Below are positions 11,805-63,852 of a stretch of DNA of 64,000 nt, one piece after another (position 1 is the first letter of the stretch; each line of letters opens with the position of its first letter). Under the pieces are notes generated by a model. That model did not search any database. It saw nothing but the letters and a program-made list of their open reading frames with translations, and had not been told where the DNA came from. The translations under genes were made by a program, and so were the position numbers. The stretch spans positions 186,001-250,000 of IMG/VR virus record IMGVR_UViG_3300041411_000129; one strand, given 5' to 3'.

Positions 11805-11881
11805 TCCGCGATAGCTCAGTTTGGTAGAGCAAACGGCTGTTAACCGTTGGGTCCCTGGTTCGAGTCCAGGTCGTGGAGCCA
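11805..11881 (+). tRNA. tRNA-Asn(GUU)
   Basis: Canonical cloverleaf, loop CTGTTAA, G73, encoded CCA. Confidence 0.95.
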
Positions 11882-11896
11882 ATTTCTTGTTGTAAT

Positions 11897-11974
11897 GGTG
11901 GGCTTAGCTCAGTTGGTTAGAGCAGCGGCGGGCTTTGCTGTGTGTCCTAGGTTCGAATCCTAGAGTCCACCCCA
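11897..11974 (+). ncRNA. tRNA-His-like RNA (G-1:C73) with non-canonical anticodon loop GGGCTTT
   Basis: Intact acceptor GTGGGCT/AGTCCAC, D and T arms, CCA; no Y32/U33/R37. Confidence 0.8.
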
Positions 11975-11981
11975 TATTCTC

Positions 11982-12070
11982 GAGACTGTAGCACAGTGTT
12001 AGTGCGATCAGCAGGCGTGGTAATTCTCGTCGGCTGGAATGCGTGGGTTCGATTCCCAACGGTCTCACCC
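11982..12070 (+). ncRNA. tRNA-like RNA with expanded anticodon arm
   Basis: GAGACTG/CGGTCTC acceptor, GCAC/GTGC D stem, TTCGATT T loop, 20-nt insert in anticodon arm, ends ACCC. Confidence 0.7.
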
Positions 12071-12106
12071 CATTTCTTTGCAGGGATGCGTAATCGAGTA
12101 TTAAGC

Positions 12107-12781
12107 ATGTCTGTTGATATCAGTAACTATCTGATCGCTACACCACTTCCAGTATCTGAAACCAATCCAGTCGCCTTAGAGCTGCTTGGATCTCTGGCAT
12201 TGATTCAATGTCCTGAGGTTGTTTCTCAGCTGGAAGATGGGTCTGTTCAATTCACCGCACCTACTAAAGGTGCGTCCAGTAAGAGTACTCACCGTACTCG
12301 CACTGAATGGAAAGAACCTGAGTACTGGGCGTTGTCTAGTGCAGCTAAGCACTGGAGTCGCCAGACGATGACTGTTACTAAAGTCAACTCTGCTCAGAAG
12401 GTGGTGGTTGCACAGATTCACGTCAAGGATGCTACAACGCCTCCTTTGAAAGTGTTCTGGAACAAAGGTAAGTTGACGATGGGTTTCCGCGGTAGTTTCG
12501 CCGATCCTACAATCGTTAACTATACCCTCCATACCGACGTACCCTTGGGCGTTCCGTTCAAGATCAGTATCGGTGTGACAGCCAGCGGTTCGGTGTCTGT
12601 CAACGCATCATGTCAAGGGGTTCCTTCCCTAAAGAACGCGTTGAAGTTGAGCAGCACTTGGTTTGACCGCGTACTTCAGTTCCATGGCGGCGTCTACAAC
12701 CAAGTCGACTACACCGATCTTACCTCTGACGAGGATGGTTCGATCTGCATTATCAGTGAGTTGTCTACAACTCACGAATGA
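12107..12781 (+). CDS. Polysaccharide lyase family 7 (alginate lyase-like)
   Basis: RTRTEWKE, QIH and QFHGGVYNQ match the three conserved PL7 strands; upstream part of the ORF-track call overlaps a tRNA-like RNA, so start set at ATG 12107. Confidence 0.85.
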   Translation: MSVDISNYLIATPLPVSETNPVALELLGSLALIQCPEVVSQLEDGSVQFTAPTKGASSKSTHRTRTEWKEPEYWALSSAAKHWSRQTMTVTKVNSAQKVVVAQIHVKDATTPPLKVFWNKGKLTMGFRGSFADPTIVNYTLHTDVPLGVPFKISIGVTASGSVSVNASCQGVPSLKNALKLSSTWFDRVLQFHGGVYNQVDYTDLTSDEDGSICIISELSTTHE

Positions 12782-12787
12782 TTCAAT

Positions 12788-12939
12788 GACTTCTATAGCT
12801 CAGTTGGTAGAGCGTCGTCACTCTCTTTAGGTCGCGGGTTCGAGTCCCGTATCCCCAGCAACGGGGATTAGCTCAGTCGGTAGAGCAGAAGAAAATTACG
12901 AGACGAAGGTCGTAGGTTCAATCCCTGCTAGAAGTCCCA
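12788..12939 (+). ncRNA. Nested double tRNA: outer cloverleaf containing a circularly permuted complete tRNA
   Basis: Acceptor ACTTCTA pairs with TAGAAGT at the end of the second unit; ATCCCC/GGGGAT hairpin; swapped anticodon stems TCGTC/GACGA and GAAGA/TCTTT. Confidence 0.85.
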
Positions 12940-12944
12940 ATTAA

Positions 12945-13020
12945 TGATGCAAGCCTGCGCCCGACACTAAGAGCCCGACGATAGTCATATAGCTCACTAC
13001 GTTGGCCGCAGGCGGCATCA
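12945..13020 (+). ncRNA. Rod-like spacer RNA A
   Basis: TGATGC/GCATCA, GCCTGCG/CGCAGGC, CCGAC/GTTGG, GAGC/GCTC, GAC-GATA-GTC. Confidence 0.6.
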
Positions 13021-13028
13021 CCCTACAC

Positions 13029-13105
13029 GCGTTCATAGTTCAGCTGGTTAGAATACTCGCCTGTCACGCGAGAGGTCGGGGGTTCGAGTCCCCCTGGACG
13101 CGCCA
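13029..13105 (+). tRNA. tRNA-Asp(GUC)
   Basis: Canonical cloverleaf, loop CTGTCAC, G73, CCA. Confidence 0.95.
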
Positions 13106-13121
13106 TATTCAAATGCTTCAT

Positions 13122-13248
13122 GATTCGCATAGCTCAGTGGTAGAGCGCCCCCACAACGGTTCGACTCCGTACGCATCCATCCTTCGGTTTGGGTGTGACC
13201 TGGATAACATGGGGGAGGTCGATGGTTCAAGTCCATCTGTGAATCCCA
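13122..13248 (+). ncRNA. tRNA-like RNA (G-1:C73, CCA) with permuted T-arm/acceptor module in the anticodon loop
   Basis: ATTCGCA/TGTGAAT; CCCCC/GGGGG; inner ACGG-TTCGACT-CCGT plus CGCATCC/GGGTGTG. Confidence 0.8.
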
Positions 13249-13254
13249 ATTCAA

Positions 13255-13322
13255 TGATCCTTGCAGCGGCTGCGCCTGAGTAAATGCTGTCTTAACTTGA
13301 CGTTACGGCGTCAAGAGGATCA
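13255..13322 (+). ncRNA. Spacer RNA B
   Basis: TGATCC/GGATCA closing helix; TTGACG/CGTCAA hairpin. Confidence 0.5.
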
Positions 13323-13332
13323 CCCGTTACAC

Positions 13333-13418
13333 GGAGAGGTTCCCGAGCGGTCAAAGGGATCAGACTGTAAATCTGACGCCTAACAGCTTCGAAGGTTCGA
13401 ATCCTTCTCTCTCCACCA
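13333..13418 (+). tRNA. tRNA-Tyr(GUA)
   Basis: Type II cloverleaf, loop CTGTAAA, A73, CCA. Confidence 0.95.
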
Positions 13419-13836: not shown

Positions 13837-13867
13837 CATAAAGCCCGGCATTCCGCCGGGCTTTATG
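13837..13867 (+). terminator. Terminator ending the RNA cluster
   Basis: CATAAAGCCCGGC/GCCGGGCTTTATG, 13-bp stem. Confidence 0.8.
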
Positions 13868-13892
13868 CTGTCACTAACTAAACTGAAGAGAA

Positions 13893-50976: not shown

Positions 50977-51007
50977 CATAAAGCCCGGCACAATGCCGGG
51001 CTTTATG
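50977..51007. terminator. Bidirectional terminator
   Basis: CATAAAGCCCGGCA/TGCCGGGCTTTATG, 14 bp. Confidence 0.85.
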
Positions 51008-51014
51008 TCGTTCG

Positions 51015-54000
51015 TCACTTGATGCTACGTTCCATCCACGTCAGCAGAGCGATGATTGTGTCCTTAGCAATCACGTCTGGATGAGGTAGACCTTCCACGA
51101 AGACTTGACTAACACCCTGGTGATACCACTTATCGTAGAAATCCATGTACAGGGGATTGTCGTAATCGTAGATAGCGTCACTGAACTCAGACCCATCCGA
51201 ATGATCCAGCCAAGTGAACCAGTAGTCCTTCTCATACATCGGAAGGAGCTGCTCGATCAACTTAACTGCCTGTAGAATCTCAGCTTGTGTCAACGCCTTG
51301 ATCGTTTCAGGAGCCTTCACTGGAGTTTCGCGACTGTCAATCCAAATGTCGAATTCACGTTTCTCTACCTTAGTAGTGAATGCCGTGTGTCCGCCGATAG
51401 AATGAGTAGGTTTCAGATCAACGATAGGGGTTGGGATTTTCTTGAAGTCGGCGATAGCCTTCTCCCCCAACTCCTTAACCTTATCCGCATCATCCGCCTT
51501 GATCGCCGCGATAATCTTCGGTACTACACCTTTGTAGATCGATTGAACTGCGTCGTTCATGGCTTTCAATTGACCATGGAACTTATCACACAACCGACTG
51601 GCGTCACCTACAGCGCTACTGACCGCAGGAATGGAGTCCAAGAACTTACCGTTCAGCGAGAGTGCCTGAGCGATACCACCACTCGATACCGTGCTATTGA
51701 AAGTCTGCTCCGACAACCATTTGCTATTGCCGAAGTATTCTTTCAGGTATCTGTCAATACCTGTCGCATCGAGCATGTTGTGTTTTTCTTTAATGACGGC
51801 CTTGTTCCTGGCTTCATCCATCTTCTTCTTTGGATCGCCGACGATCAGATTTTTAATGCTCTTCATCATGTCGGAGAAACCTTCAAAGGAAGGCGGAATG
51901 ACTTTAATCTGCACAGAGTAGCCGTGCAGTGCCTGCCTGACGTCAACAGGTACGCAACGAACGATGTTCTTGCTGACTTCGCCTTGAGTCTTGTACTCAC
52001 CAGACAATCCATTGACTGGGTTGTAGTTTGCCATCCAACCATCTTTGACGTCCGGTTTGATCGTGTACAGGAATACCTGCAACGCATGAACGTCAGTAAT
52101 AGTCAGAGGTTCGTTCGACTCGATCTCGATACGACGGCCAGTGAACTTGTAACGGTTGAGTTTGAACTTCTTCTCGATAGCCGAGGAGATACCCAACATC
52201 ACCGCCGTGTCCTTGTCGTCAGCAGCGTACAGCCATTCATTAGTCTCGCACTTATCCCAACGCACGATCTCACCACTACGTTGGAAGCCAGGCAGAAGCT
52301 CGCCTTGCTTGAACGCAGAGCCGTGGTAGAGGTATTGCGGCAGATCTACTTCAGGTTCTTCCTGTACAGCGTACGGCGCAATGGTGTCGCCAACTTCACG
52401 GGAATAAGCAGCCGATTCCGAGTTCCAGCCTTCACCACCGCCACGATGCATGTCGCCTTGGAAGACGCCCAGCAGATCAGCAACGAACGACCCTAAGTCA
52501 GCCATGAAGTCGAACACTTCCAGAGACAGAGTCTCGGTGTCCACGTTCTTGATGCCGAGGATAGATGCGGTCATTTCAGCCGACCACGTCAGGATGTCGT
52601 TACTGCGGGTGGAGATGTTTGGAGCATCGCCAGTATCCAGCAAGAAGTCGAAGACGAATACTTCACTGTCTTGACCCAACCGGGCAGCACGAGCGATTGT
52701 CTGTGTGCGGATCGCATCACGGAACGGTTGGTTGAGCATCAGGATGGTGTTTGCAACGGTCAGTGGTACGGCCGTAGACAAACTCTGGAATGTAGCGACC
52801 AGAGGATTGAGGTCCTCATCCTTGTAGTACTTGGCCACGATGGTTGGTAAGTCCTTATTGGTCTCACCGTACACCTTCGCTGGAGTATACCCATCGTGGT
52901 ACAGTTTGTCGGCAGCAGCTTCCAGCACTTCAACGTAACTGGTGAAGATCAGCGTCTTCTTCTTAGCCGCATCGATGTACTTCTCGAGATCGATGTGCGC
53001 CAGCATATCCAGGTGGCATGCACTGCGGGCCTTACCAAGCACCCCGCCGAGCGCCTCACCCATGATTTTCAACTTGACATATTTAACTACACTGCGGGCG
53101 CCTTTGAACTCAGCTTTCAGAGAACCATTCAGCCTTGGCATGATGGTCTTCAGCTCGTACCGATTACAGAGCTGAGCCTCAGCCTTCATGGTCATCGGAT
53201 CAAATCCGCCAGATACAGTTGCGAAAGCAGATCGATAAGCGTTGAACTCACGACGATCAAGATCAGTACGAAGAGTCTTCTCAAATTCATTGAGACCTTC
53301 CTTGTACTTATCTTCGTAGAACTTCCGGTTCTTCTCGTAGTAGTCCTTGCGTTCATCAATGAACTTACGCATCCGAGCGCCGATGGCTTCCAACGTATAG
53401 TCGTTACCATTAGGCATCTTCACCATGACCTGTTCCACAGTCACCACTGTGTCTACCACGTCCTGTTTAGGAACGTGATACTTCAGGTGACCGATGCGGT
53501 TACGGAGAATGTCGTTTGCGCGTTTAGCGTCCTTGCCGTAGATCTTACGGAAGGCTTCTTCGCAGTTATCATCAAAGTACGGATCGACACACTTAAGGAA
53601 AGGAATACATTCCGATCCCATCGCTTGGATTGGTGTACCGGACATCCATAGGCAGTAAGCGATAGTCGGCATCTTACACATCTCGACCAATAGCTGGGTG
53701 CGGTCAGCGGCAAGACGGTTGAAGTTGTGCGACTCATCGACGATGATCATGGCGTCTTTGAATTCGCGAGGGTTGGCTTTAACGAAGTCGAAGATCGTTT
53801 GGATCGATTCGTAGTGGCAAACGTAGAAGTGCTCGTCCAGCGTCGGGAGACGACCTTCAGTACTCACCCAGTAACGACGCTTGGTCATCATGATGTCTTG
53901 GATGGTATCCTTCCAAACACGCTCTGCGGCGTTCTTAGGAGTGAAGACGATAACCTTAGGCGCATGTAGTGCCTCGCTCAACACGAGAGCTGTAACAGTC

Positions 54001-54470
54001 TTACCGGTGCCTGCGCCAGCATCGAGCAGATAACCTTTAAGCTTGTAAGCAGGGACCATCCGACCGTACAGTTGAGCGAACTCACGCTGGAAAGGCTTCA
54101 GTGGGAATGGAACCTGATTGTCCACTACAGACATGTCAGTGATCGACTTGACATCACGGTCTACGTCACCGAGCCAAGTCTTCTCACGTAGCTCCTCGAT
54201 GACCTTAGCCAGTACACGCTTCGGCGTACGGGTCTGCTTGTCATCGTACAGCGTTTGACACATGTAAAGGAAGTCGAATCCGAAGAAGTGACGCATCTTG
54301 AATTCGCTACTTCGAACATTCTGGAACATGTACTTGTAGAGAGCGTTGGTTCCCCAGAGACGATACACGTCCTTGAAGAACAGCATCGTACTGATACCTT
54401 CCACTACAATGAAATCACGGGTAGTGGTTACGTCCACTAATCCAAGACGCCGCCTTAATCCTGCTAACAT
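51015..54470 (-). CDS. SNF2/SF2 helicase with about 500-aa C-terminal extension
   Basis: DAGAGTGKT, IVDESHN, MSGTP, QTIARAARLGQ. Confidence 0.88.
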   Translation of the reverse strand: MLAGLRRRLGLVDVTTTRDFIVVEGISTMLFFKDVYRLWGTNALYKYMFQNVRSSEFKMRHFFGFDFLYMCQTLYDDKQTRTPKRVLAKVIEELREKTWLGDVDRDVKSITDMSVVDNQVPFPLKPFQREFAQLYGRMVPAYKLKGYLLDAGAGTGKTVTALVLSEALHAPKVIVFTPKNAAERVWKDTIQDIMMTKRRYWVSTEGRLPTLDEHFYVCHYESIQTIFDFVKANPREFKDAMIIVDESHNFNRLAADRTQLLVEMCKMPTIAYCLWMSGTPIQAMGSECIPFLKCVDPYFDDNCEEAFRKIYGKDAKRANDILRNRIGHLKYHVPKQDVVDTVVTVEQVMVKMPNGNDYTLEAIGARMRKFIDERKDYYEKNRKFYEDKYKEGLNEFEKTLRTDLDRREFNAYRSAFATVSGGFDPMTMKAEAQLCNRYELKTIMPRLNGSLKAEFKGARSVVKYVKLKIMGEALGGVLGKARSACHLDMLAHIDLEKYIDAAKKKTLIFTSYVEVLEAAADKLYHDGYTPAKVYGETNKDLPTIVAKYYKDEDLNPLVATFQSLSTAVPLTVANTILMLNQPFRDAIRTQTIARAARLGQDSEVFVFDFLLDTGDAPNISTRSNDILTWSAEMTASILGIKNVDTETLSLEVFDFMADLGSFVADLLGVFQGDMHRGGGEGWNSESAAYSREVGDTIAPYAVQEEPEVDLPQYLYHGSAFKQGELLPGFQRSGEIVRWDKCETNEWLYAADDKDTAVMLGISSAIEKKFKLNRYKFTGRRIEIESNEPLTITDVHALQVFLYTIKPDVKDGWMANYNPVNGLSGEYKTQGEVSKNIVRCVPVDVRQALHGYSVQIKVIPPSFEGFSDMMKSIKNLIVGDPKKKMDEARNKAVIKEKHNMLDATGIDRYLKEYFGNSKWLSEQTFNSTVSSGGIAQALSLNGKFLDSIPAVSSAVGDASRLCDKFHGQLKAMNDAVQSIYKGVVPKIIAAIKADDADKVKELGEKAIADFKKIPTPIVDLKPTHSIGGHTAFTTKVEKREFDIWIDSRETPVKAPETIKALTQAEILQAVKLIEQLLPMYEKDYWFTWLDHSDGSEFSDAIYDYDNPLYMDFYDKWYHQGVSQVFVEGLPHPDVIAKDTIIALLTWMERSIK

Positions 54471-56531: not shown

Positions 56532-56849
56532 TTAGAGTTCGGACTCAGGGATGTCAACCATCGACACTGTTTGTCCAGCCAGCTCGTGCGTGCAGTCGCT
56601 GAGGAATTCCCACTGCCCGTTACGAATGAAGCTGTGGCAAACAACCGCTTCAGTGCAGAACTTATTGAATTGAACCATGATGCTTGGCGAATACGTCGGC
56701 ATGTTGACGTTACCATCCCACTGCCACTGCTGATTACTATCACTCGGTTTATCTACTGCGATGTGGTGCATCCACTTACAGCCTGGGCAATAAAGTCCAT
56801 GCATGAAGCCTGCGAAGAGTTCGATCTTAGGTGAGAGTAATTCGCTCAT
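56532..56849 (-). CDS. DUF6527-like Cys/His protein
   Basis: CPGC..H...W.WDG....PTYSPSI...CHSFIRNG..EFLSDCTH.LAGQTV. Confidence 0.7.
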   Translation of the reverse strand: MSELLSPKIELFAGFMHGLYCPGCKWMHHIAVDKPSDSNQQWQWDGNVNMPTYSPSIMVQFNKFCTEAVVCHSFIRNGQWEFLSDCTHELAGQTVSMVDIPESEL

Positions 56850-56885: not shown

Positions 56886-57317
56886 ATGTCTGGGCTTTCT
56901 TACGATCTGGAGCGGCTATTAAAGCTAGCGCTACGAGATCCATTTCTTGGTCACGCAGCCTTACAGTCGAACATGGAGAACATCACTCCTATCGTCTATA
57001 AAGGACACACCGTTGGCTTCGCAGTTCCGTTCCGTGAAAAGGATGGCTACTGGCGAACTGGTTCTATCTTCATCGAACCTGCATTCCGTCGTAAAGGAAT
57101 CGCACACGCTTGGATCGAGGAGTTCATGGAAGGTAAGGCTGGGCGTGCATGGATTGATCCACGTAACGCTTCGAGCATCGCAGCTTACACTGCGGCAGGC
57201 TTTACCAAGTCAGGAAGACGTGTCAAATCAGATAAGACTGGTAACTGGTTTGATGAGTATCTGACAGAAGAAGCAGGTATGGAGAGCAAGCTACCTACGA
57301 CGCTGCTGGCTTGGTGA
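56886..57317 (+). CDS. GNAT-family N-acetyltransferase
   Basis: IFIEPAFRRKGIA; NASSIAAYTAAGF. Confidence 0.85.
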   Translation: MSGLSYDLERLLKLALRDPFLGHAALQSNMENITPIVYKGHTVGFAVPFREKDGYWRTGSIFIEPAFRRKGIAHAWIEEFMEGKAGRAWIDPRNASSIAAYTAAGFTKSGRRVKSDKTGNWFDEYLTEEAGMESKLPTTLLAW

Positions 57318-57328
57318 TCACTATTATA

Positions 57329-57599
57329 TATGTACTAGGCTGCTTCGGGCTGATGAAGCCAAGTATCATGCTAGGTGGGCTCACACGCTCCTCCACCTAG
57401 CCACTGAGGTCGGGACGCTCTCCTCGACCTAGGCGTTGATGTTCGCGGGTTCGTCAACGTCTTGTTAGGTACTCAGTACTTAGCCGTTTGAGAATGGTAA
57501 CGTGAGAGCGCGCCTTTCTCAAACGGATAGCTACTGCGCCCCTGTGTGTTATCGGTATTCTCCCCACCTACTGGAGCAATCTGGTAGGTGGGGTTTATG
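57329..57599 (+). ncRNA. Candidate TATG-initiated sRNA with anti-SD loops
   Basis: Five stems plus GCAA-capped terminator; no credible ORF. Confidence 0.6.
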
Positions 57600-57665
57600 C
57601 TGCGTGTTAAGAAACCGCAGCCACACATTACCATTTCGTATAACATCAATCAATGGAGTAACACC

Positions 57666-58055
57666 ATGGCAGAACGTCTCGTAGCAATTGTCCACATGCA
57701 CCAAACCGATTCAGACAAACACATGTTCGACTATAACGGTCGGATGATCCATATTTGCCCACGACCTTACAAAGAGGACTGTGTCCCAGTCGAGGTGGTT
57801 TACGTAAACCTGATTGGAGATCTGGTGATCGAGCGTGGTGATGTCTACATGCACGTCCTGAAACACGGTGATCAGGCCGGCTACTCTAAGGCTATGGCGG
57901 GTCCTTTCCGGATTGGATTCGAAGACCTTAAGAAGCGGTTCTATTTCCACTACCTCAAGAAAGAAGGCATCCATAAATGGCGGTGTCCTACAGACGACAT
58001 CGAACTGGCTTGGGAGCATGCTCAACCAATGCCGTATAAATCACAGTCAAAATAA
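57666..58055 (+). CDS. Hypothetical protein
   Basis: GGAG SD before ATG 57666. Confidence 0.75.
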   Translation: MAERLVAIVHMHQTDSDKHMFDYNGRMIHICPRPYKEDCVPVEVVYVNLIGDLVIERGDVYMHVLKHGDQAGYSKAMAGPFRIGFEDLKKRFYFHYLKKEGIHKWRCPTDDIELAWEHAQPMPYKSQSK

Positions 58056-58116
58056 TTACAGTCATACATTGCGTCAGTACATACACACAACGATATCCAT
58101 TCCGGATACGTTAAAC

Positions 58117-58129
58117 GACCGTGGAGGTC
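58117..58129 (+). promoter_or_regulatory. SD-caging hairpin (copy 7)
   Basis: GACC-GTGGA-GGTC before ATG 58133. Confidence 0.75.
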
Positions 58130-58132
58130 AAC

Positions 58133-58525
58133 ATGTCTGCAATCACTCTCGCTACTATCGAAGCCACCCTGCGCGCAGTACTGACTGCTCCTGAAGGCGA
58201 TCAAGTAATCACCTTCTCTCAAGGTGCTATCGACCAGATGAATGAAATAACTGACATCATCATCACCGCCACAGGCTACGATGAATCCAAGGTGTCTGAA
58301 GACGATCTGATTCTAGCCGCTTCTTTCGCCAGCTATTTCACCAAAGCCGCAGTTAGTGGTGTGGTTGTAGATGGGGTTATTCAGCCAGCCAAGGAAGAAG
58401 AATACCGTGCTGAGCTGGTGAAGGTAAAAGAAGTCTACAGTCAAGGCGCTGGCATGTGCGGCGTAGCTTTACCTGTAGTTCTTCTTTGCAAGCTATTCAA
58501 CGAACTGCCTAGCTTCACCCGTTAA
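58133..58525 (+). CDS. Hypothetical protein, tandem paralog 1
   Basis: ITLATIEATLRAVLTAPEG. Confidence 0.8.
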   Translation: MSAITLATIEATLRAVLTAPEGDQVITFSQGAIDQMNEITDIIITATGYDESKVSEDDLILAASFASYFTKAAVSGVVVDGVIQPAKEEEYRAELVKVKEVYSQGAGMCGVALPVVLLCKLFNELPSFTR

Positions 58526-59310: not shown

Positions 59311-59757
59311 ATGTTCTGCGCAACCCGTAATGAAGTAGCTGTGACCAAGAAACGCTTCGTCAATCTGACTGAAGATGATTTCAACGTTGGCATGTACACC
59401 ATCGCGACTAAGCTGAACAAGTTCGCCGACTTCGCGATGTTCCAATCTTCGCATGACGAAGATGGCTTGCGGATGACTTTCTTTGTAGAGAATGCCAAAG
59501 GCGAAGAGATCGTTAAAGGGATCTACCGCAAATGGGCTCAGCTGTTGGCTAACACCATGAAGACTGGTGCAGCTAAACGTAAGATGTACGACACGACTCA
59601 GATCGCCGTACGTCAAATACGTCACCCGTATGCGGAAGGTCGAGACATCCCAGTGTGGGTTTGGGAGATCTCTACCAAATACGAACTTCGCACCAACACC
59701 GATGCAGTCTACGATTTACTGAAGACCGCTATCGAATACGTTGAGAAGCATCACTAA
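59311..59757 (+). CDS. Hypothetical protein
   Basis: 148-aa ORF. Confidence 0.8.
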   Translation: MFCATRNEVAVTKKRFVNLTEDDFNVGMYTIATKLNKFADFAMFQSSHDEDGLRMTFFVENAKGEEIVKGIYRKWAQLLANTMKTGAAKRKMYDTTQIAVRQIRHPYAEGRDIPVWVWEISTKYELRTNTDAVYDLLKTAIEYVEKHH

Positions 59758-59812
59758 TCGATTACCGGCGGGGTTTCTCCCCGCCAACACTTTCTTATTT
59801 AGGAGCTACACC

Positions 59813-60514
59813 ATGAACAATATTCAAGATGCTGGTGTTGTACTGGCTGCATTGGCTGAAGCCGGTGGCCGTTATGTTGACGATCACATTGATCGTGAAG
59901 CTACCGTAAAGCACGCTGCAATCTTCCAGCGTGCTAACTCTCGTGACGTATGCGTACCAATCCTCAGCGGGCAGTACTTCTGCCTCAACGGCATGTACAT
60001 CGGCGAAGATTCGAAAGTCCACCTGTCCAAGGAATCTGTTGGCGGCGTGGTTGACGGTCGAACGCTTGGTGTGAAAGAATCGATCGAATACTTCAACAAA
60101 GTTTATCAGCCTTCTCGGTTGATCGACCTGACTGAATTCGAAGCGCGTCCTGCGGCCGCTACCCGATCTGTCTTCAAGAAGCACGAAAGCTTCTACGCTT
60201 ACAACGTCGTCGACACTCACGACGCAGCAGGTACGATCTTCTACCGCAACACTTATTACAACACCATTCGTGAGAAGGATTGTGTTGACTGGCAGATCGC
60301 TCGTGCGGTGCAGCTGAGTCCAACTGACGTGTACGTACGTGAGTACACTGCGGATGGTGCGATCAGTCACTACATCCACATGCCGGTAATGGAGAAGTTG
60401 ATTGAGCACCGCGACTTCTGCAAGAACGCTGGTATTCCGTACGGCGAGATCCACAACGTAGACGCCATCAAAGCAGCTATCGTTGAGTTCTACCAGATCC
60501 GCGCTGGCAAGTAA
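59813..60514 (+). CDS. Hypothetical protein
   Basis: AGGAG SD before ATG 59813. Confidence 0.8.
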   Translation: MNNIQDAGVVLAALAEAGGRYVDDHIDREATVKHAAIFQRANSRDVCVPILSGQYFCLNGMYIGEDSKVHLSKESVGGVVDGRTLGVKESIEYFNKVYQPSRLIDLTEFEARPAAATRSVFKKHESFYAYNVVDTHDAAGTIFYRNTYYNTIREKDCVDWQIARAVQLSPTDVYVREYTADGAISHYIHMPVMEKLIEHRDFCKNAGIPYGEIHNVDAIKAAIVEFYQIRAGK

Positions 60515-60587
60515 GAGGGTGGGGACTTCGGTCCCCATTCTTTTTTTTTGTCGTGATCCGTAATTAATTACTGTGGCGATGTGATAC

Positions 60588-60906
60588 TATGTAGAAACGC
60601 CCTCATTGATTAGTCAATGCACAGTTGATACACCTAGCTCTTTTACAACTTATTAGTCTCCCTCAAGATAGTAAGGACGAACTCATACGTCCAGCTCCCT
60701 CTGATAGACACAAGCATCGCTGGTATAAAGCCCAGCACACCCCTAGCGGTCTTACAGAGTCTGACCGCGTTCCCTTAGAGTTTGGAATAGAACCAGTACA
60801 GTACGGGTCCAATCGCCGCGATTGCTTTAGTACTCGAACAAACGTGCCGGGCCTTTCGGAGCATCCCGTAAGAAATATAAAGCCCGGCCTCGCGCCGGGC
60901 TTTATG
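60588..60906 (+). ncRNA. Candidate TATG-initiated multi-hairpin ncRNA
   Basis: Series of short stems between two terminators; no credible ORF. Confidence 0.4.
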
Positions 60907-60989
60907 CCGCATGTGTAATAAAAGAAAACAGAGTCTTATATTGTACACTTGAATCTATACCGCCCCTAATACCCGCACGGAGCATTAAC

Positions 60990-61787
60990 ATGTCTGCCTA
61001 CCTGTCTCAACAAGATAAAGCTAAAGTCAACATTCTGGAAGGCTACGCTCCTCGCAAGCTTACCAACGTTGAAGTGATCATCAACGAGATTCGTCTATTC
61101 GATTGGACGTATCCTGATAGCGACTGCCCAAAGACCTATAAGGCCGGCGCTGAGCGTAAAGAAGTTCTGCGTAGCGCTATCTCCTACACTCTGGGTGATA
61201 ATCCGTCTCTCGCCACTCTGGCTCGTGCAGCGTTGGAAGGTCAGCAAGCTCGTAACGATCTGTTCGACAAATACCCGTATGTCAAACACTTCGACCTGAT
61301 GAACGCCAAGAGTCATAAAGGTCTACTTGGGTGCCATCTGGCTGGTCACGACACGTATCGAGTCATGGCTTGCATCGACTTCCTTAAAGACCTCTACGAC
61401 ATCGTTGTAGCCCTTCCAGCGAACAAGAGCAACGTGTTCATCTCCACGAATAGAACGCCGATGTACCGTGACCTGAGAGCCATTGCTGTCAACTCCAAGG
61501 TTCCAGCATTGTTCGGTATGGCGATCCCGGCTGCACTTCAGCAACGCGTCTACGACGTCCTGCGTGTAAACACGTATACGCTCGACATCATCCAACAGTT
61601 CGGTCTGCACGGCATTGACCAGATGATGGATTACTACAAGAACCACCCGTCCTCCAAAGAAGCTTTCCGCGTCTTCAATATGTTTGAAGTTGTGGACTGT
61701 CCTTACGTGCGGGATGCGAAGTATCTTCAGGTAATCATGAACGATCGGTACTACTCGTTCTACGTCAAGCGTAATCAGTTCGTGTAA
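60990..61787 (+). CDS. Hypothetical protein
   Basis: GGAG SD. Confidence 0.85.
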   Translation: MSAYLSQQDKAKVNILEGYAPRKLTNVEVIINEIRLFDWTYPDSDCPKTYKAGAERKEVLRSAISYTLGDNPSLATLARAALEGQQARNDLFDKYPYVKHFDLMNAKSHKGLLGCHLAGHDTYRVMACIDFLKDLYDIVVALPANKSNVFISTNRTPMYRDLRAIAVNSKVPALFGMAIPAALQQRVYDVLRVNTYTLDIIQQFGLHGIDQMMDYYKNHPSSKEAFRVFNMFEVVDCPYVRDAKYLQVIMNDRYYSFYVKRNQFV

Positions 61788-63812: not shown

Positions 63813-63822
63813 GTGATGTAAA

Positions 63823-63852
63823 CATAACGCCCGGCTTCGGCCGGGCTTTATG
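63823..63852 (+). terminator. Terminator
   Basis: GCCCGGC-TTCG-GCCGGGC-TTTATG. Confidence 0.8.

What the first reader, a model, noticed from the sequence alone, without database searches (positions are those of the whole stretch)
57329..57599. Candidate late sRNA exposing anti-SD sequences complementary to both hairpin classes
A non-coding 270-nt unit begins at a TATG (the G at 57332 starts the first helix) and ends in a terminator. Stems: GCTAGGTGG/CCACCTAGC (57370-401), AGGTCG/CGACCT (57407-30), AGGCGTTGA/TCAACGTCT (57431-62) and CCGTTTGAGAA/TTCTCAAACGG (57484-526). Two loops both end in CTCCT. CCTCCAC (57390-96) is the reverse complement of GTGGAGG, and CTCCTCG (57420-26) of CGAGGAG, matching the two loop classes of the SD hairpins. 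A 7-bp loop-loop pair, CGCTCTC (57416-22) with GAGAGCG (57504-10), could mask one site. Inference: an antisense shut-off of the early regulon, or, if transcribed from the minus strand, an RsmY/Z-like GGA sponge.
Basis: partly seen in the sequence, partly recalled or inferred. Interest (0 to 1): 0.75.

Follow-up and report, generated by a model that had tools for sequence, protein, structure and literature searches.

The report
New structured RNA gene in jumbo phages
The 270-base stretch is a real, previously uncatalogued non-coding RNA gene of an uncultured clade of phiKZ-like giant phages that folds into seven helices locked by a loop-loop contact, but comparison with relatives does not support the proposed role of pairing with ribosome-binding-site hairpins.

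Summary

**What it is**
- The region is a stand-alone, plus-strand, roughly 266-nt structured RNA gene.
- It starts at a conserved TTATATG, the phiKZ late-promoter type, with G57332 as the likely +1.
- It ends at a 14-bp terminator followed by the phage's usual TTTATGC tail.

**Evidence that it is real**
- I found 13 further homologs in soil, rhizosphere and other metagenome contigs of related jumbo phages.
- All ten nested helices carry compensatory changes.
- G·U pairs outnumber A·C by 150 to 17, which fixes the strand.
- In close relatives, 178 nt are identical while the flanks are only 77-88% identical.
It is a genuine tertiary, or possibly intermolecular, kissing contact.

- The relatives keep identical SD hairpins, but their RNAs lack the two anti-SD 7-mers (present in 1 of 12).
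- One of those 7-mers is buried in the stem and kissing pair.
- Only a CUCC in the first large loop is conserved.
- The minus-strand RsmY/Z idea is rejected.

**What is still open**
- There is no Rfam match, and 10 cultured phiKZ-like phages gave no match.
- The function is unknown. It most likely acts through its fold, as a protein- or partner-binding RNA.
- Transcription is inferred, not shown.

The parts
57322..57332 (+). Promoter-like motif TATTATATATG; G57332 is the putative +1 (phiKZ late type, TATG with G as the start).
   Evidence: The core TTATATG (TATTATG in L099) stands at the 5' end of the RNA in 12 of the 13 loci scanned; L094's 5' end was read. In L100 it lies about 30 nt upstream of the model hit. 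In relatives' 12-15 kb loci it occurs almost nowhere else. The 9-mer TATTATATG with up to one mismatch is depleted in this window: 1 site against 8.2 expected. Only 4 such sites exist in the genome. The phiKZ late consensus comes from PMC4666361. Transcription was not observed.
57333..57365 (+). Helix P1 (H0), with the conserved loop GGGC(U)GA. It is absent or replaced in the most distant homologs.
   Evidence: 82-92% of cells paired, with compensatory changes in all 13 pairs.
57370..57401 (+). Helix P2 (H1), 10 bp. Its 12-nt loop (57380-57391) ends in the family-wide motif YRCUCC (CGCUCC at 57386-57391).
   Evidence: 99% of cells paired and 10 of 10 pairs have compensatory changes. Of the 14 aligned RNAs, 13 keep CUC at the loop motif and 11 keep the full CUCC, or CCUCC in L096. 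CCTCCAC itself is not conserved.
57407..57430 (+). Helix P3 (H2). Its apical loop 57416-57422 (CGCUCUC) is strand a of the kissing pair.
57431..57462 (+). Helix P4 (H3), which abuts P3 with no linker. It has U·U mismatches and an apical loop with conserved YGGGU.
   Evidence: 98% paired and 12 of 12 pairs compensatory.
57464..57484 (+). Helix P5 (H4), a short hairpin with a conserved 3' AGCC.
   Evidence: 91% paired.
57485..57525 (+). Helix P6 (H5), a long stem. Its apical loop 57504-57510 (GAGAGCG) is strand b of the kissing pair.
   Evidence: Three covarying stem versions exist even among near-identical relatives. 96% paired and 16 of 17 pairs compensatory. The kissing pair is shown.
57526..57553 (+). 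Helix P7 (H6), with a C-rich loop (CCCC in most homologs).
   Evidence: 89% paired, 8 of 9 pairs compensatory. This is the least well aligned part in distant homologs.
57562..57600 (+). Intrinsic terminator: a 14-bp stem at 57562-75/57580-93, then UUUAUGC. The flanking GGUAU (57554-58) pairs with AUGCU (57597-601).
   Evidence: 99% paired and 13 of 14 pairs compensatory. The stem-plus-TTTATGC tail is this phage's standard terminator form, with about 25 copies, many of them palindromic CATAAAG...CTTTATG.
56886..57317 (+). Upstream GNAT-like acetyltransferase ORF, the syntenic neighbour. Its stop codon lies 15 nt before the putative +1.
   Evidence: Pfam GNAT hits. It is orthologous and immediately upstream of the RNA in 10 of 13 loci. 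No functional link was tested.
57600..57640 (+). 3' boundary, not part of the RNA: a hairpin at 57600-57622 and the motif CAGCCACACATTACC ahead of ORF 57666.
   Evidence: The motif ACAGnCAYACATTAC recurs after terminators and ahead of genes. It resembles the phiKZ middle-promoter motif AAanTTACc (PMC4666361). So the downstream ORF has its own promoter-like element.

Best explanation
The region 57332 to about 57598 (+) is the gene of a stand-alone, compactly folded non-coding RNA of about 266 nt. [quoted passage not shown]

**Shown**
- Seven helices plus a terminator, all maintained by compensatory substitutions.
- A covarying 7-bp kissing interaction between the apical loops of P3 and P6.
- Plus-strand polarity.
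- Very strong purifying selection on primary sequence.
- A conserved TTATATG at the 5' edge and a phage-type intrinsic terminator at the 3' edge.
- Independence from the downstream gene.

**Inferred**
- It is transcribed from G57332 by the phage non-virion RNA polymerase, by analogy with phiKZ late promoters. It may also be read through from the GNAT gene.
- It works through its three-dimensional fold. The conserved unpaired elements would serve as contact sites for a protein or another macromolecule, making it an RNP scaffold or decoy, rather than a linear antisense regulator of the SD hairpins. Those elements are YRCUCC in the P2 loop, GGGC(U)GA in P1, YGGGU in P4 and the C-rich P7 loop.
- Its partner and its effect are unknown.
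For: **Structure**
- z = -6.65 against shuffles.
- RNAalifold on 5 sequences: 29 of 97 pairs have double changes.
- On 12 sequences, all 10 helices are 82-99% paired and nearly every pair has compensatory types.

**Kissing pair**
- 92 of 96 cells are paired.
- Up to 4 pair types occur per position.
- 0 of 5000 partner shuffles reach the observed value.
- Slid registers give 36-60 of 95.
- An unbiased scan finds it as the one long, strongly covarying non-nested stack (7 bp); the only other non-nested stack was a 4-bp one overlapping P3 and P4.
- These loop columns were not fitted to each other by the model.

**Strand**
- 150 G·U against 17 A·C in paired cells.
- A T·G wobble in the L002 stem works only on the plus strand.

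**Selection**
- 57312-57489 is invariant in 5 sequences whose flanks are 77-88% identical.

**Family**
- Covariance-model hits with E from 1e-102 down to 7e-10 in 14 loci.
- One copy in the phage's own genome.

**Boundaries**
- TTATATG is conserved and nearly unique.
- Terminator.
- RNA polymerase beta and beta' fragments are encoded by the phage.
- phiKZ TATG start point (PMC4666361).

**Independence**
- Downstream genes are not homologous across loci.
- In run X7 the downstream gene is replaced while the RNA is kept.
- The downstream ORF has its own promoter-like motif.
Against: - There is no direct evidence of transcription. The two 'RNA?' wastewater runs hold only short, low-depth contigs. 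One of them is flagged as probably DNA.
- No partner has been identified.
- The protein-RNA prediction was not run by the tool.
- The extended TTATATG motif is almost unique in the genome. It is therefore not demonstrably the general late promoter of this phage.
- The conserved CUCC loop would also fit an RNA-RNA (SD-binding) function.
- The model-based alignments lean towards the nested structure.
Confidence: 0.55

Rival explanations
1. Trans-acting anti-SD regulator. The conserved CUCC in the P2 loop pairs with GGAG in the loops of the SD hairpins, or in SD sequences generally, and modulates their translation.
For: - CUCC sits in the P2 loop in 11 of 14 family members.
- The SD hairpins are a real, conserved motif class in this phage and its relatives.
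- In the window, 7-nt complements to both classes exist.
Against: - The 7-mers are not conserved although the targets are (1 of 12).
- Only 4 nt of complementarity survive.
- CTCCTCG is paired and part of the kissing interaction.
- Chance gives both-class matches in 3% of shuffles.
- Near-total sequence constraint over 178 nt, together with a tertiary contact, is not what seed-pairing sRNAs usually show.
- L105 and L095 lack CUCC.
Confidence: 0.12
2. The kissing pair is intermolecular. The RNA would form homo-oligomers (dimer, ring or cage) as phi29 pRNA and ROOL/GOLLD do, acting as an RNA-only or RNP assembly.
For: - Covariation cannot tell cis from trans pairing.
- phi29 pRNA's loop-loop pairing was likewise found by covariation (own knowledge).
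- ROOL, GOLLD and OLE assemble through kissing loops (bioRxiv 10.1101/2024.12.08.627333).
Against: There is no evidence for oligomers. The two loops lie in one molecule, separated by two helices, which is geometrically compatible with a cis contact. There is no homology to those families.
Confidence: 0.1
3. Cis-acting element. Either it is a structured 3' UTR and terminator module stabilising the GNAT mRNA, or it is a leader or riboswitch that attenuates transcription into the downstream gene.
For: - It starts 15 nt after the GNAT stop codon.
- GNAT is orthologous upstream in 10 of 13 loci.
- It ends in a strong terminator ahead of a co-directional ORF.
Against: - The RNA is kept without the GNAT gene in L099, L103 and L100.
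- Downstream genes are unrelated between loci and are replaced in X7.
- The downstream ORF has its own promoter-like motif.
- A conserved TTATATG marks the RNA's own 5' end.
- The one alternative pairing I saw, between the P2 5' strand and the terminator 5' strand, is not conserved in L090 or L094.
Confidence: 0.1
4. Catalytic RNA: a self-cleaving or otherwise catalytic ribozyme of a new class.
For: It has a complex fold with a tertiary contact, near-invariant unpaired nucleotides and about 270 nt. These are features shared by many ribozymes (own knowledge).
Against: It matches no known ribozyme model. There is no flanking-exon or repeat context. It has its own promoter and terminator.
Confidence: 0.07
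5. Minus-strand transcript acting as an RsmY/Z-like GGA sponge.
For: The minus strand also folds well (z = -5.63). The complements of the CUCC loops would be GGAG.
Against: - G·U to A·C is 150 to 17, which favours the plus strand.
- The promoter motif and the U-tail terminator are on the plus strand.
- No Rsm or Csr family match.
Confidence: 0.01

Closest known systems
sRNAs of phiKZ-like phages defined by a TSS followed closely by a terminator (201phi2-1 sRNA005 / phiKZ sRNA upstream of gp182; PMC11512511)
   Same: Short non-coding units in jumbo phages with their own RNA polymerases. Each is bounded by a phage promoter and a nearby terminator and is conserved between related giant phages. 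Function is unknown.
   Different: Those are 5'-UTR-derived, under 250 nt, and tied to a conserved tail gene. This RNA is intergenic, is not tied to its downstream gene, and has seven helices and a kissing contact. Model R2 finds nothing in phiKZ, 201phi2-1 or PhiPA3.
phi29 pRNA (packaging RNA)
   Same: A phage-encoded structured RNA whose key feature is a covarying loop-loop pairing (own knowledge).
   Different: pRNA is about 120-174 nt, belongs to small phi29-like phages, and its loops pair between molecules on the packaging motor. There is no sequence or model match here, and nothing links this RNA to packaging.
ROOL / GOLLD / OLE large ornate RNAs
   Same: Phage- or prophage-associated, complex-folded RNAs of unknown function in which kissing loops are central (bioRxiv 10.1101/2024.12.08.627333).
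   Different: They are two to three times larger and form large homo-oligomers. The Rfam models for them do not match.
C-rich-loop sRNAs that pair with Shine-Dalgarno sequences (S. aureus RNAIII / Rsa type, UCCC loops)
   Same: A conserved unpaired C/U-rich motif (CUCC) in a hairpin loop, complementary to GGAG (own knowledge for the comparison; for the motif).
   Different: Extended complementarity to the candidate targets is not conserved. The RNA is far more constrained and tertiary-structured than such sRNAs.
RsmY/RsmZ/CsrB protein sponges
   Same: Multi-hairpin RNA ending in a terminator.
   Different: There are no repeated GGA loops on the transcribed strand. P6 loops of some homologs contain GGA, but that sequence is the kissing strand, and the window's version (GAGAGCG) lacks it. 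No model match.

Membership tests
Any Rfam 15 family (including RsmY/Z, CsrB, pRNA, ROOL, GOLLD, 6S, tmRNA, riboswitches, ribozymes) | Covariance-model score at or near the family's gathering threshold | tested here: not met
   No gathering-score hit in the region. The only hit at E<=10 is snoZ168 at 14.7 bits, E = 5. Four homolog loci show no family hitting the RNA consistently. ARAGORN finds no tRNA or tmRNA there.
RsmY/RsmZ/CsrB-type sponge | Several GGA motifs exposed in hairpin loops of the transcribed strand | tested here: not met
   The plus strand is the RNA strand. Its conserved loops are CUCC, GGGC(U)GA and YGGGU. GGA occurs only in the P6 loop of some homologs, where it pairs with the P3 loop.
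Base-pairing anti-SD sRNA | A conserved, unpaired seed complementary to the targets' SD region | tested here: inconclusive
   A 4-nt CUCC is conserved in the P2 loop in 11 of 14 homologs. The 7-nt complements are not conserved, although identical SD hairpins persist in relatives.
Base-pairing anti-SD sRNA | Demonstrated RNA-RNA duplex or regulatory effect | not testable with these tools
   This needs an EMSA or reporter assay.
phiKZ-type late transcription unit | TATG at the start site with G as +1, recognised by the non-virion RNA polymerase (PMC4666361) | tested here: inconclusive
   TTATATG is conserved at the 5' edge of the RNA in the homologs examined. The phage encodes RNA polymerase beta and beta' fragments. 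The start site and the temporal class were not observed.
Intrinsic (factor-independent) terminator | G+C-rich stem followed by a U-rich tail | tested here: met
   A 14-bp stem with 8 G-C pairs, then UUUAU. The stem covaries. The same tail follows about 25 other terminator stems in the genome.
Riboswitch or transcription-attenuating leader | Conserved association with a downstream gene class, and mutually exclusive terminator/antiterminator pairing | tested here: not met
   Downstream genes are unrelated across loci and are replaced in X7. The only alternative pairing seen is not conserved.
Structured RNA with a kissing-loop tertiary contact (general class) | Covarying Watson-Crick complementarity between two hairpin loops | tested here: met
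   57416-22 pairs with 57504-10 in 92 of 96 cells. 0 of 5000 shuffles reach this value. An unbiased scan recovers the pairing.

The most novel reading that the evidence does not exclude
The RNA is the core of a new kind of jumbo-phage ribonucleoprotein or RNA-only assembly. In this reading the covarying P3-P6 loop pairing joins separate molecules into a ring or cage (pRNA/ROOL-like), or the fold is catalytic. It would then serve a step specific to phages with their own RNA polymerases and a PhuZ-like tubulin, for example handling of transcripts, ribosomes or a host defence factor.
Probability: 0.12. Interest if true: 0.85.

Novelty: new member of a known kind. Interest (0 to 1): 0.6.

Why it matters
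Giant phiKZ-like phages run their own transcription, and almost nothing is known about their non-coding RNAs. Only a few 5'-UTR-derived sRNAs have been reported.

This is a stand-alone RNA of about 266 nt with covariation support for every helix and for a long-range loop-loop contact. It is under stronger constraint than the surrounding genes and is spread over a whole uncultured clade found in soil, rhizosphere, root and wastewater samples. Such complex-folded RNAs usually turn out to be ribozymes, ligand sensors or RNP cores.

It gives a concrete target that can be synthesised for structure determination and partner search. It also shows that the 'anti-SD' reading, attractive from one sequence alone, does not survive comparison with relatives.

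Tried and rejected
**Searches that found no relative or no family**
- blastn of the region and its flanks against 50,697 phage records: no match.
- Four exact 18-mer scans of IMG/VR found only one relative contig.
- L004, and the pair L013/L030, are chance hits in high-GC coding DNA.
- The downstream protein gave no related loci.
- Model R2 found nothing in LucasX, Eowyn, KpHz_2, pPa_SNUABM_DT01, FLC9, RP31, Goslar, phiKZ, 201phi2-1 or PhiPA3. The tool's first-look filter returned no candidates at all in nine of the ten; in FLC9 its one candidate scored E = 0.7. So this is weak evidence of absence.
- The filters-off cmsearch failed internally.

**Expression**
- Read laying on two 'RNA?' runs gave only short, low-depth contigs of a relative.
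- One run was flagged as probably DNA.
- This is no evidence of transcription.

**Partner tests**
- Complex prediction for GNAT plus RNA was not folded by the tool. It is no evidence either way.
- The GNAT protein is generic, with weak RimI-like similarity only.

**Ideas rejected on the comparative data**
- A second tertiary contact between the P4 loop GGG and the P7 loop CCCC looked plausible by eye. The unbiased scan did not recover it.
- An antiterminator pairing of the P2 5' strand with the terminator 5' strand exists in the window but not in L090 or L094.
- A 15-codon ORF starting at 57353 is not conserved. Substitutions there are compensatory for pairing, not synonymous.
- TATATG is not a widespread promoter motif in this genome. 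There are 13 copies, several of them terminator tails.

Full report
**Context**

- The window is bases 186001-250000 of a 253,921-bp IMG/VR virus record with direct terminal repeats.
- The record is about 50% G+C and carries five tRNA genes.
- It encodes fragments of RNA polymerase beta and beta' and a sub-threshold tubulin-like ORF.
- It also encodes an SNF2 helicase that is 36-45% identical to the helicases of cultured phiKZ-like phages such as LucasX, Eowyn, Goslar, Ea35-70 and phiKZ relatives.
- A 447-aa neighbour matches PhiPA3 gp063 at about 22-24% identity.
- It is therefore an uncultured, distant member of the phiKZ-like jumbo phages.
- There is no nucleotide-level relative in the phage collection.

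**The observation**

- The 349-nt gap between a GNAT-like ORF (56886-57317) and a 129-aa ORF (57666-58055) folds at -136.9 kcal/mol. That is z = -6.65 against dinucleotide shuffles. The minus strand gives z = -5.63.
- A 14-bp terminator at 57562-57593 is followed by TTTAT.
- Rfam has no match.
GACC-GTGGA-GGTC or GACC-GAGGA-GGTC sits 3-8 nt before ATG in about 20 genes.
- The 7-nt complements CCTCCAC and CTCCTCG are present. A complement to both hairpin classes in some register arises in 3.1% of shuffles.

**Relatives**

I reached homologs by four routes.

- *Protein patterns.* A GNAT-based search found IMGVR_UViG_3300006051_000001, held as L002, L003 and L064.
- *DNA pattern.* An 18-mer scan of JGI metagenomes added L019, L020 and L088.
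- *Exact-protein look-ups.* GNAT and helicase relatives brought L090 and L094 to L105.
- *Public runs.* At least 18 rhizosphere, root and soil DNA runs hold most of the sequence.

A covariance model from five sequences (R1), and a second from twelve (R2), find one full-length hit in each of 14 loci. E-values run from 1e-102 to 7e-10, and L103 is found at 4e-23 with R2.

The phage's own genome holds a single copy. L104 and L105 each have a weak second hit (20-31 bits) about 3.5 kb away.

R2 found nothing in ten cultured phiKZ-like genomes. The tool's first-look filter makes that weak evidence of absence.

**It is a structured RNA on the plus strand**

- *Sequence constraint.* In the four closest contigs the flanks are 77-88% identical. 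Positions 57312-57489 and 57521-57568 are invariant. The differences inside the unit are compensatory:
  - GAGAA/TTCTC becomes GTTCA/TGAGC and then ATTCA/TGAAT in P6.
  - T/A becomes C/G in the terminator.
- *Five sequences.* 29 of 97 predicted pairs show double changes.
- *Twelve sequences.* All ten helices are 82-99% paired, and almost every pair shows compensatory types. That alignment is model-fitted, so it leans towards the nested structure.
- *Strand.* Paired cells contain 150 G·U/U·G against 17 A·C/C·A. That gives 94% pairing on the plus strand and 82% if read on the minus strand.

**The loop-loop pair is real**

- The P3 loop (57416-22) and the P6 apical loop (57504-10) are complementary in every homolog, through at least 9 different sequence versions. 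Examples are GUCCUC/GAGGAC, UAUCCUC/GAGGAUA, CAUUCCC/GGGAGUG, GUUCCC/GGGAAC and CCCCGU/ACGGGG.
- 92 of 96 cells are paired. No partner shuffle out of 5000 reaches that number (mean 77.7). Slid registers give 36-60 of 95.
- An unbiased scan of all column pairs recovers it as the one long, strongly covarying non-nested stack. The only other non-nested stack was 4 bp and overlapped P3 and P4.
- The model treats these loop columns as unpaired or as a local hairpin, so the alignment was not fitted to this interaction.
- Covariation cannot say whether the contact is within one molecule or between molecules.

**Boundaries**

- *5' edge.* The 5' edge carries TTATATG in nearly all homologs, including the most distant ones.
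- *Rarity of the motif.*
  - In relatives' 12-15 kb loci the heptamer occurs almost only there.
  - The 9-mer with one mismatch is depleted in this window: 1 site against 8.2 expected.
  - Only 4 such sites exist in the whole genome.
- *Promoter analogy.* In phiKZ, late promoters are TATG with the G as +1. They are read by the non-virion RNA polymerase (PMC4666361).
- *Best reading.* A start at G57332 is therefore the best reading. 'Late' remains an analogy.
- *3' edge.* The 3' end has the phage's standard terminator form, a G+C stem plus TTTATGC. About 25 copies exist, many of them palindromic CATAAAG...CTTTATG.
- *Downstream ORF.* A motif CAGCCACACATTACC follows, ahead of ORF 57666. It belongs to a recurrent ACAGnCAYACATTAC class. 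That class resembles the phiKZ middle-promoter motif AAanTTACc.

**What it is not**

- *Not a leader for the next gene.*
  - Downstream genes are unrelated across loci.
  - In run X7 the downstream gene is replaced by 460 other letters while the RNA stays.
- *Not tied absolutely to the GNAT gene.*
  - The GNAT gene is orthologous and directly upstream in 10 of 13 loci.
  - It is missing in L099, L103 and L100.
- *No conserved ORF*.

**The anti-SD hypothesis**

- Relatives keep the same SD hairpins, but only 1 of 12 homologous RNAs has either 7-mer.
- CCTCCAC straddles the loop and the covarying stem of P2. CTCCTCG is mostly paired in P3 and overlaps the kissing strand.
- What survives is YRCUCC in the P2 loop. 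Of the 14 aligned RNAs, 11 keep the full CUCC; L105 and L095 have GCUCG and GCUCU instead.
- That motif is compatible with touching GGAG but is too short to argue for it. It could equally be a protein or tertiary contact.
- I rate the antisense model at about 0.12.

**Most likely mechanism**

- The RNA combines near-total sequence constraint, seven covarying helices with abutting (stackable) junctions, and a long-range kissing contact.
- It also has several invariant unpaired motifs.
- That is the signature of an RNA that works through its fold.
- I therefore favour a trans-acting RNP scaffold or decoy RNA made by the phage's own polymerase.
- An oligomeric assembly, a ribozyme and a cis-acting module are the rivals.
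- Transcription, timing, partner and effect are all inferred or unknown.

**Limits**

- There were no usable expression data.
- The protein-RNA prediction was not run.
- The phage is uncultured and its host is unknown.

Noticed in passing
window 58108-58135, 6868, 47238, 54580, 58540, 59295 and elsewhere genome-wide: This is a family of translation-initiation hairpins. The form AACGACC-GTGGA-GGTC or GACC-GAGGA-GGTC (also GTCC/GGAC and GCCC/GGGC stems) places GGAGG half in the loop and half in the stem, 3-8 nt before ATG. There are about 20 copies, and they are kept unchanged in distant relatives' loci.
   Followed up: partly
genome-wide; in the window e.g. 13845-13870, 50985-51010, 60877-60907, 63820-63852: These are palindromic bidirectional terminators of the form CATAAAGCCCGGC-N4-GCCGGGCTTTATG(C). 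There are about 25 copies. The TTTATGC tail is shared by non-palindromic terminators, including the RNA's own.
   Followed up: partly
window 57622-57640, 58058-58075 and others after terminators: A recurrent motif ACAGnCAYACATTAC lies between terminators and gene starts. It resembles the phiKZ middle-promoter motif AAanTTACc.
   Followed up: no
window 60751-61050: This is a second conservation peak: 95-97% identity to L019 and L064, against about 80% in the flanks. It lies in the 475-nt gap between ORFs 59741-60514 and 60990-61787, which also holds two terminators. The stretch 60585-60910 folds at z = -2.6. It may be another non-coding element.
   Followed up: partly
L104:1206-1441 (-), L105:744-978 (-): Model R2 gives weak full-length second hits (20.5 and 31.5 bits) in intergenic gaps about 3.5 kb from the main RNA. 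They are preceded by CTATAAT rather than TTATATG and end in TTTTATGCC. They may be a paralogous RNA in that subclade.
   Followed up: partly
L103:727 (-): A second TTATATG follows a T-run terminator in a 318-nt gene-free gap. L099 has a similar gap at 739-1062.
   Followed up: no
window 56532-56849 (-): This ORF belongs to DUF6527 (labelled BubE in the newer Pfam). It is divergent from the GNAT gene and is conserved next to it in most relatives.
   Followed up: no
window 51015-54470 (-) and its relatives P0038, P0040, P0049, P0079, P0095, P0114: The SNF2 helicase varies from about 650 to 1190 aa between relatives. Several versions carry LAGLIDADG or Hom_end (intein / homing-endonuclease) domains. 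L103 and L105 have GIY-YIG genes beside it.
   Followed up: no
window 11805-13418: A cluster of five tRNA genes (Asn, Ser, Leu, Asp, Tyr).
   Followed up: no
run X16: A sequencing run labelled with a single organism ('organism A') holds a relative of this phage at about 4x depth in short contigs. This could be a lead to the host or to a contaminated culture.
   Followed up: no
window 57372-57379 and 57585-57593: The P2 5' strand (UAGGUGGG) repeats the terminator 3' strand, so it could pair with the terminator 5' strand. This holds in the window's own subclade only.
   Followed up: yes
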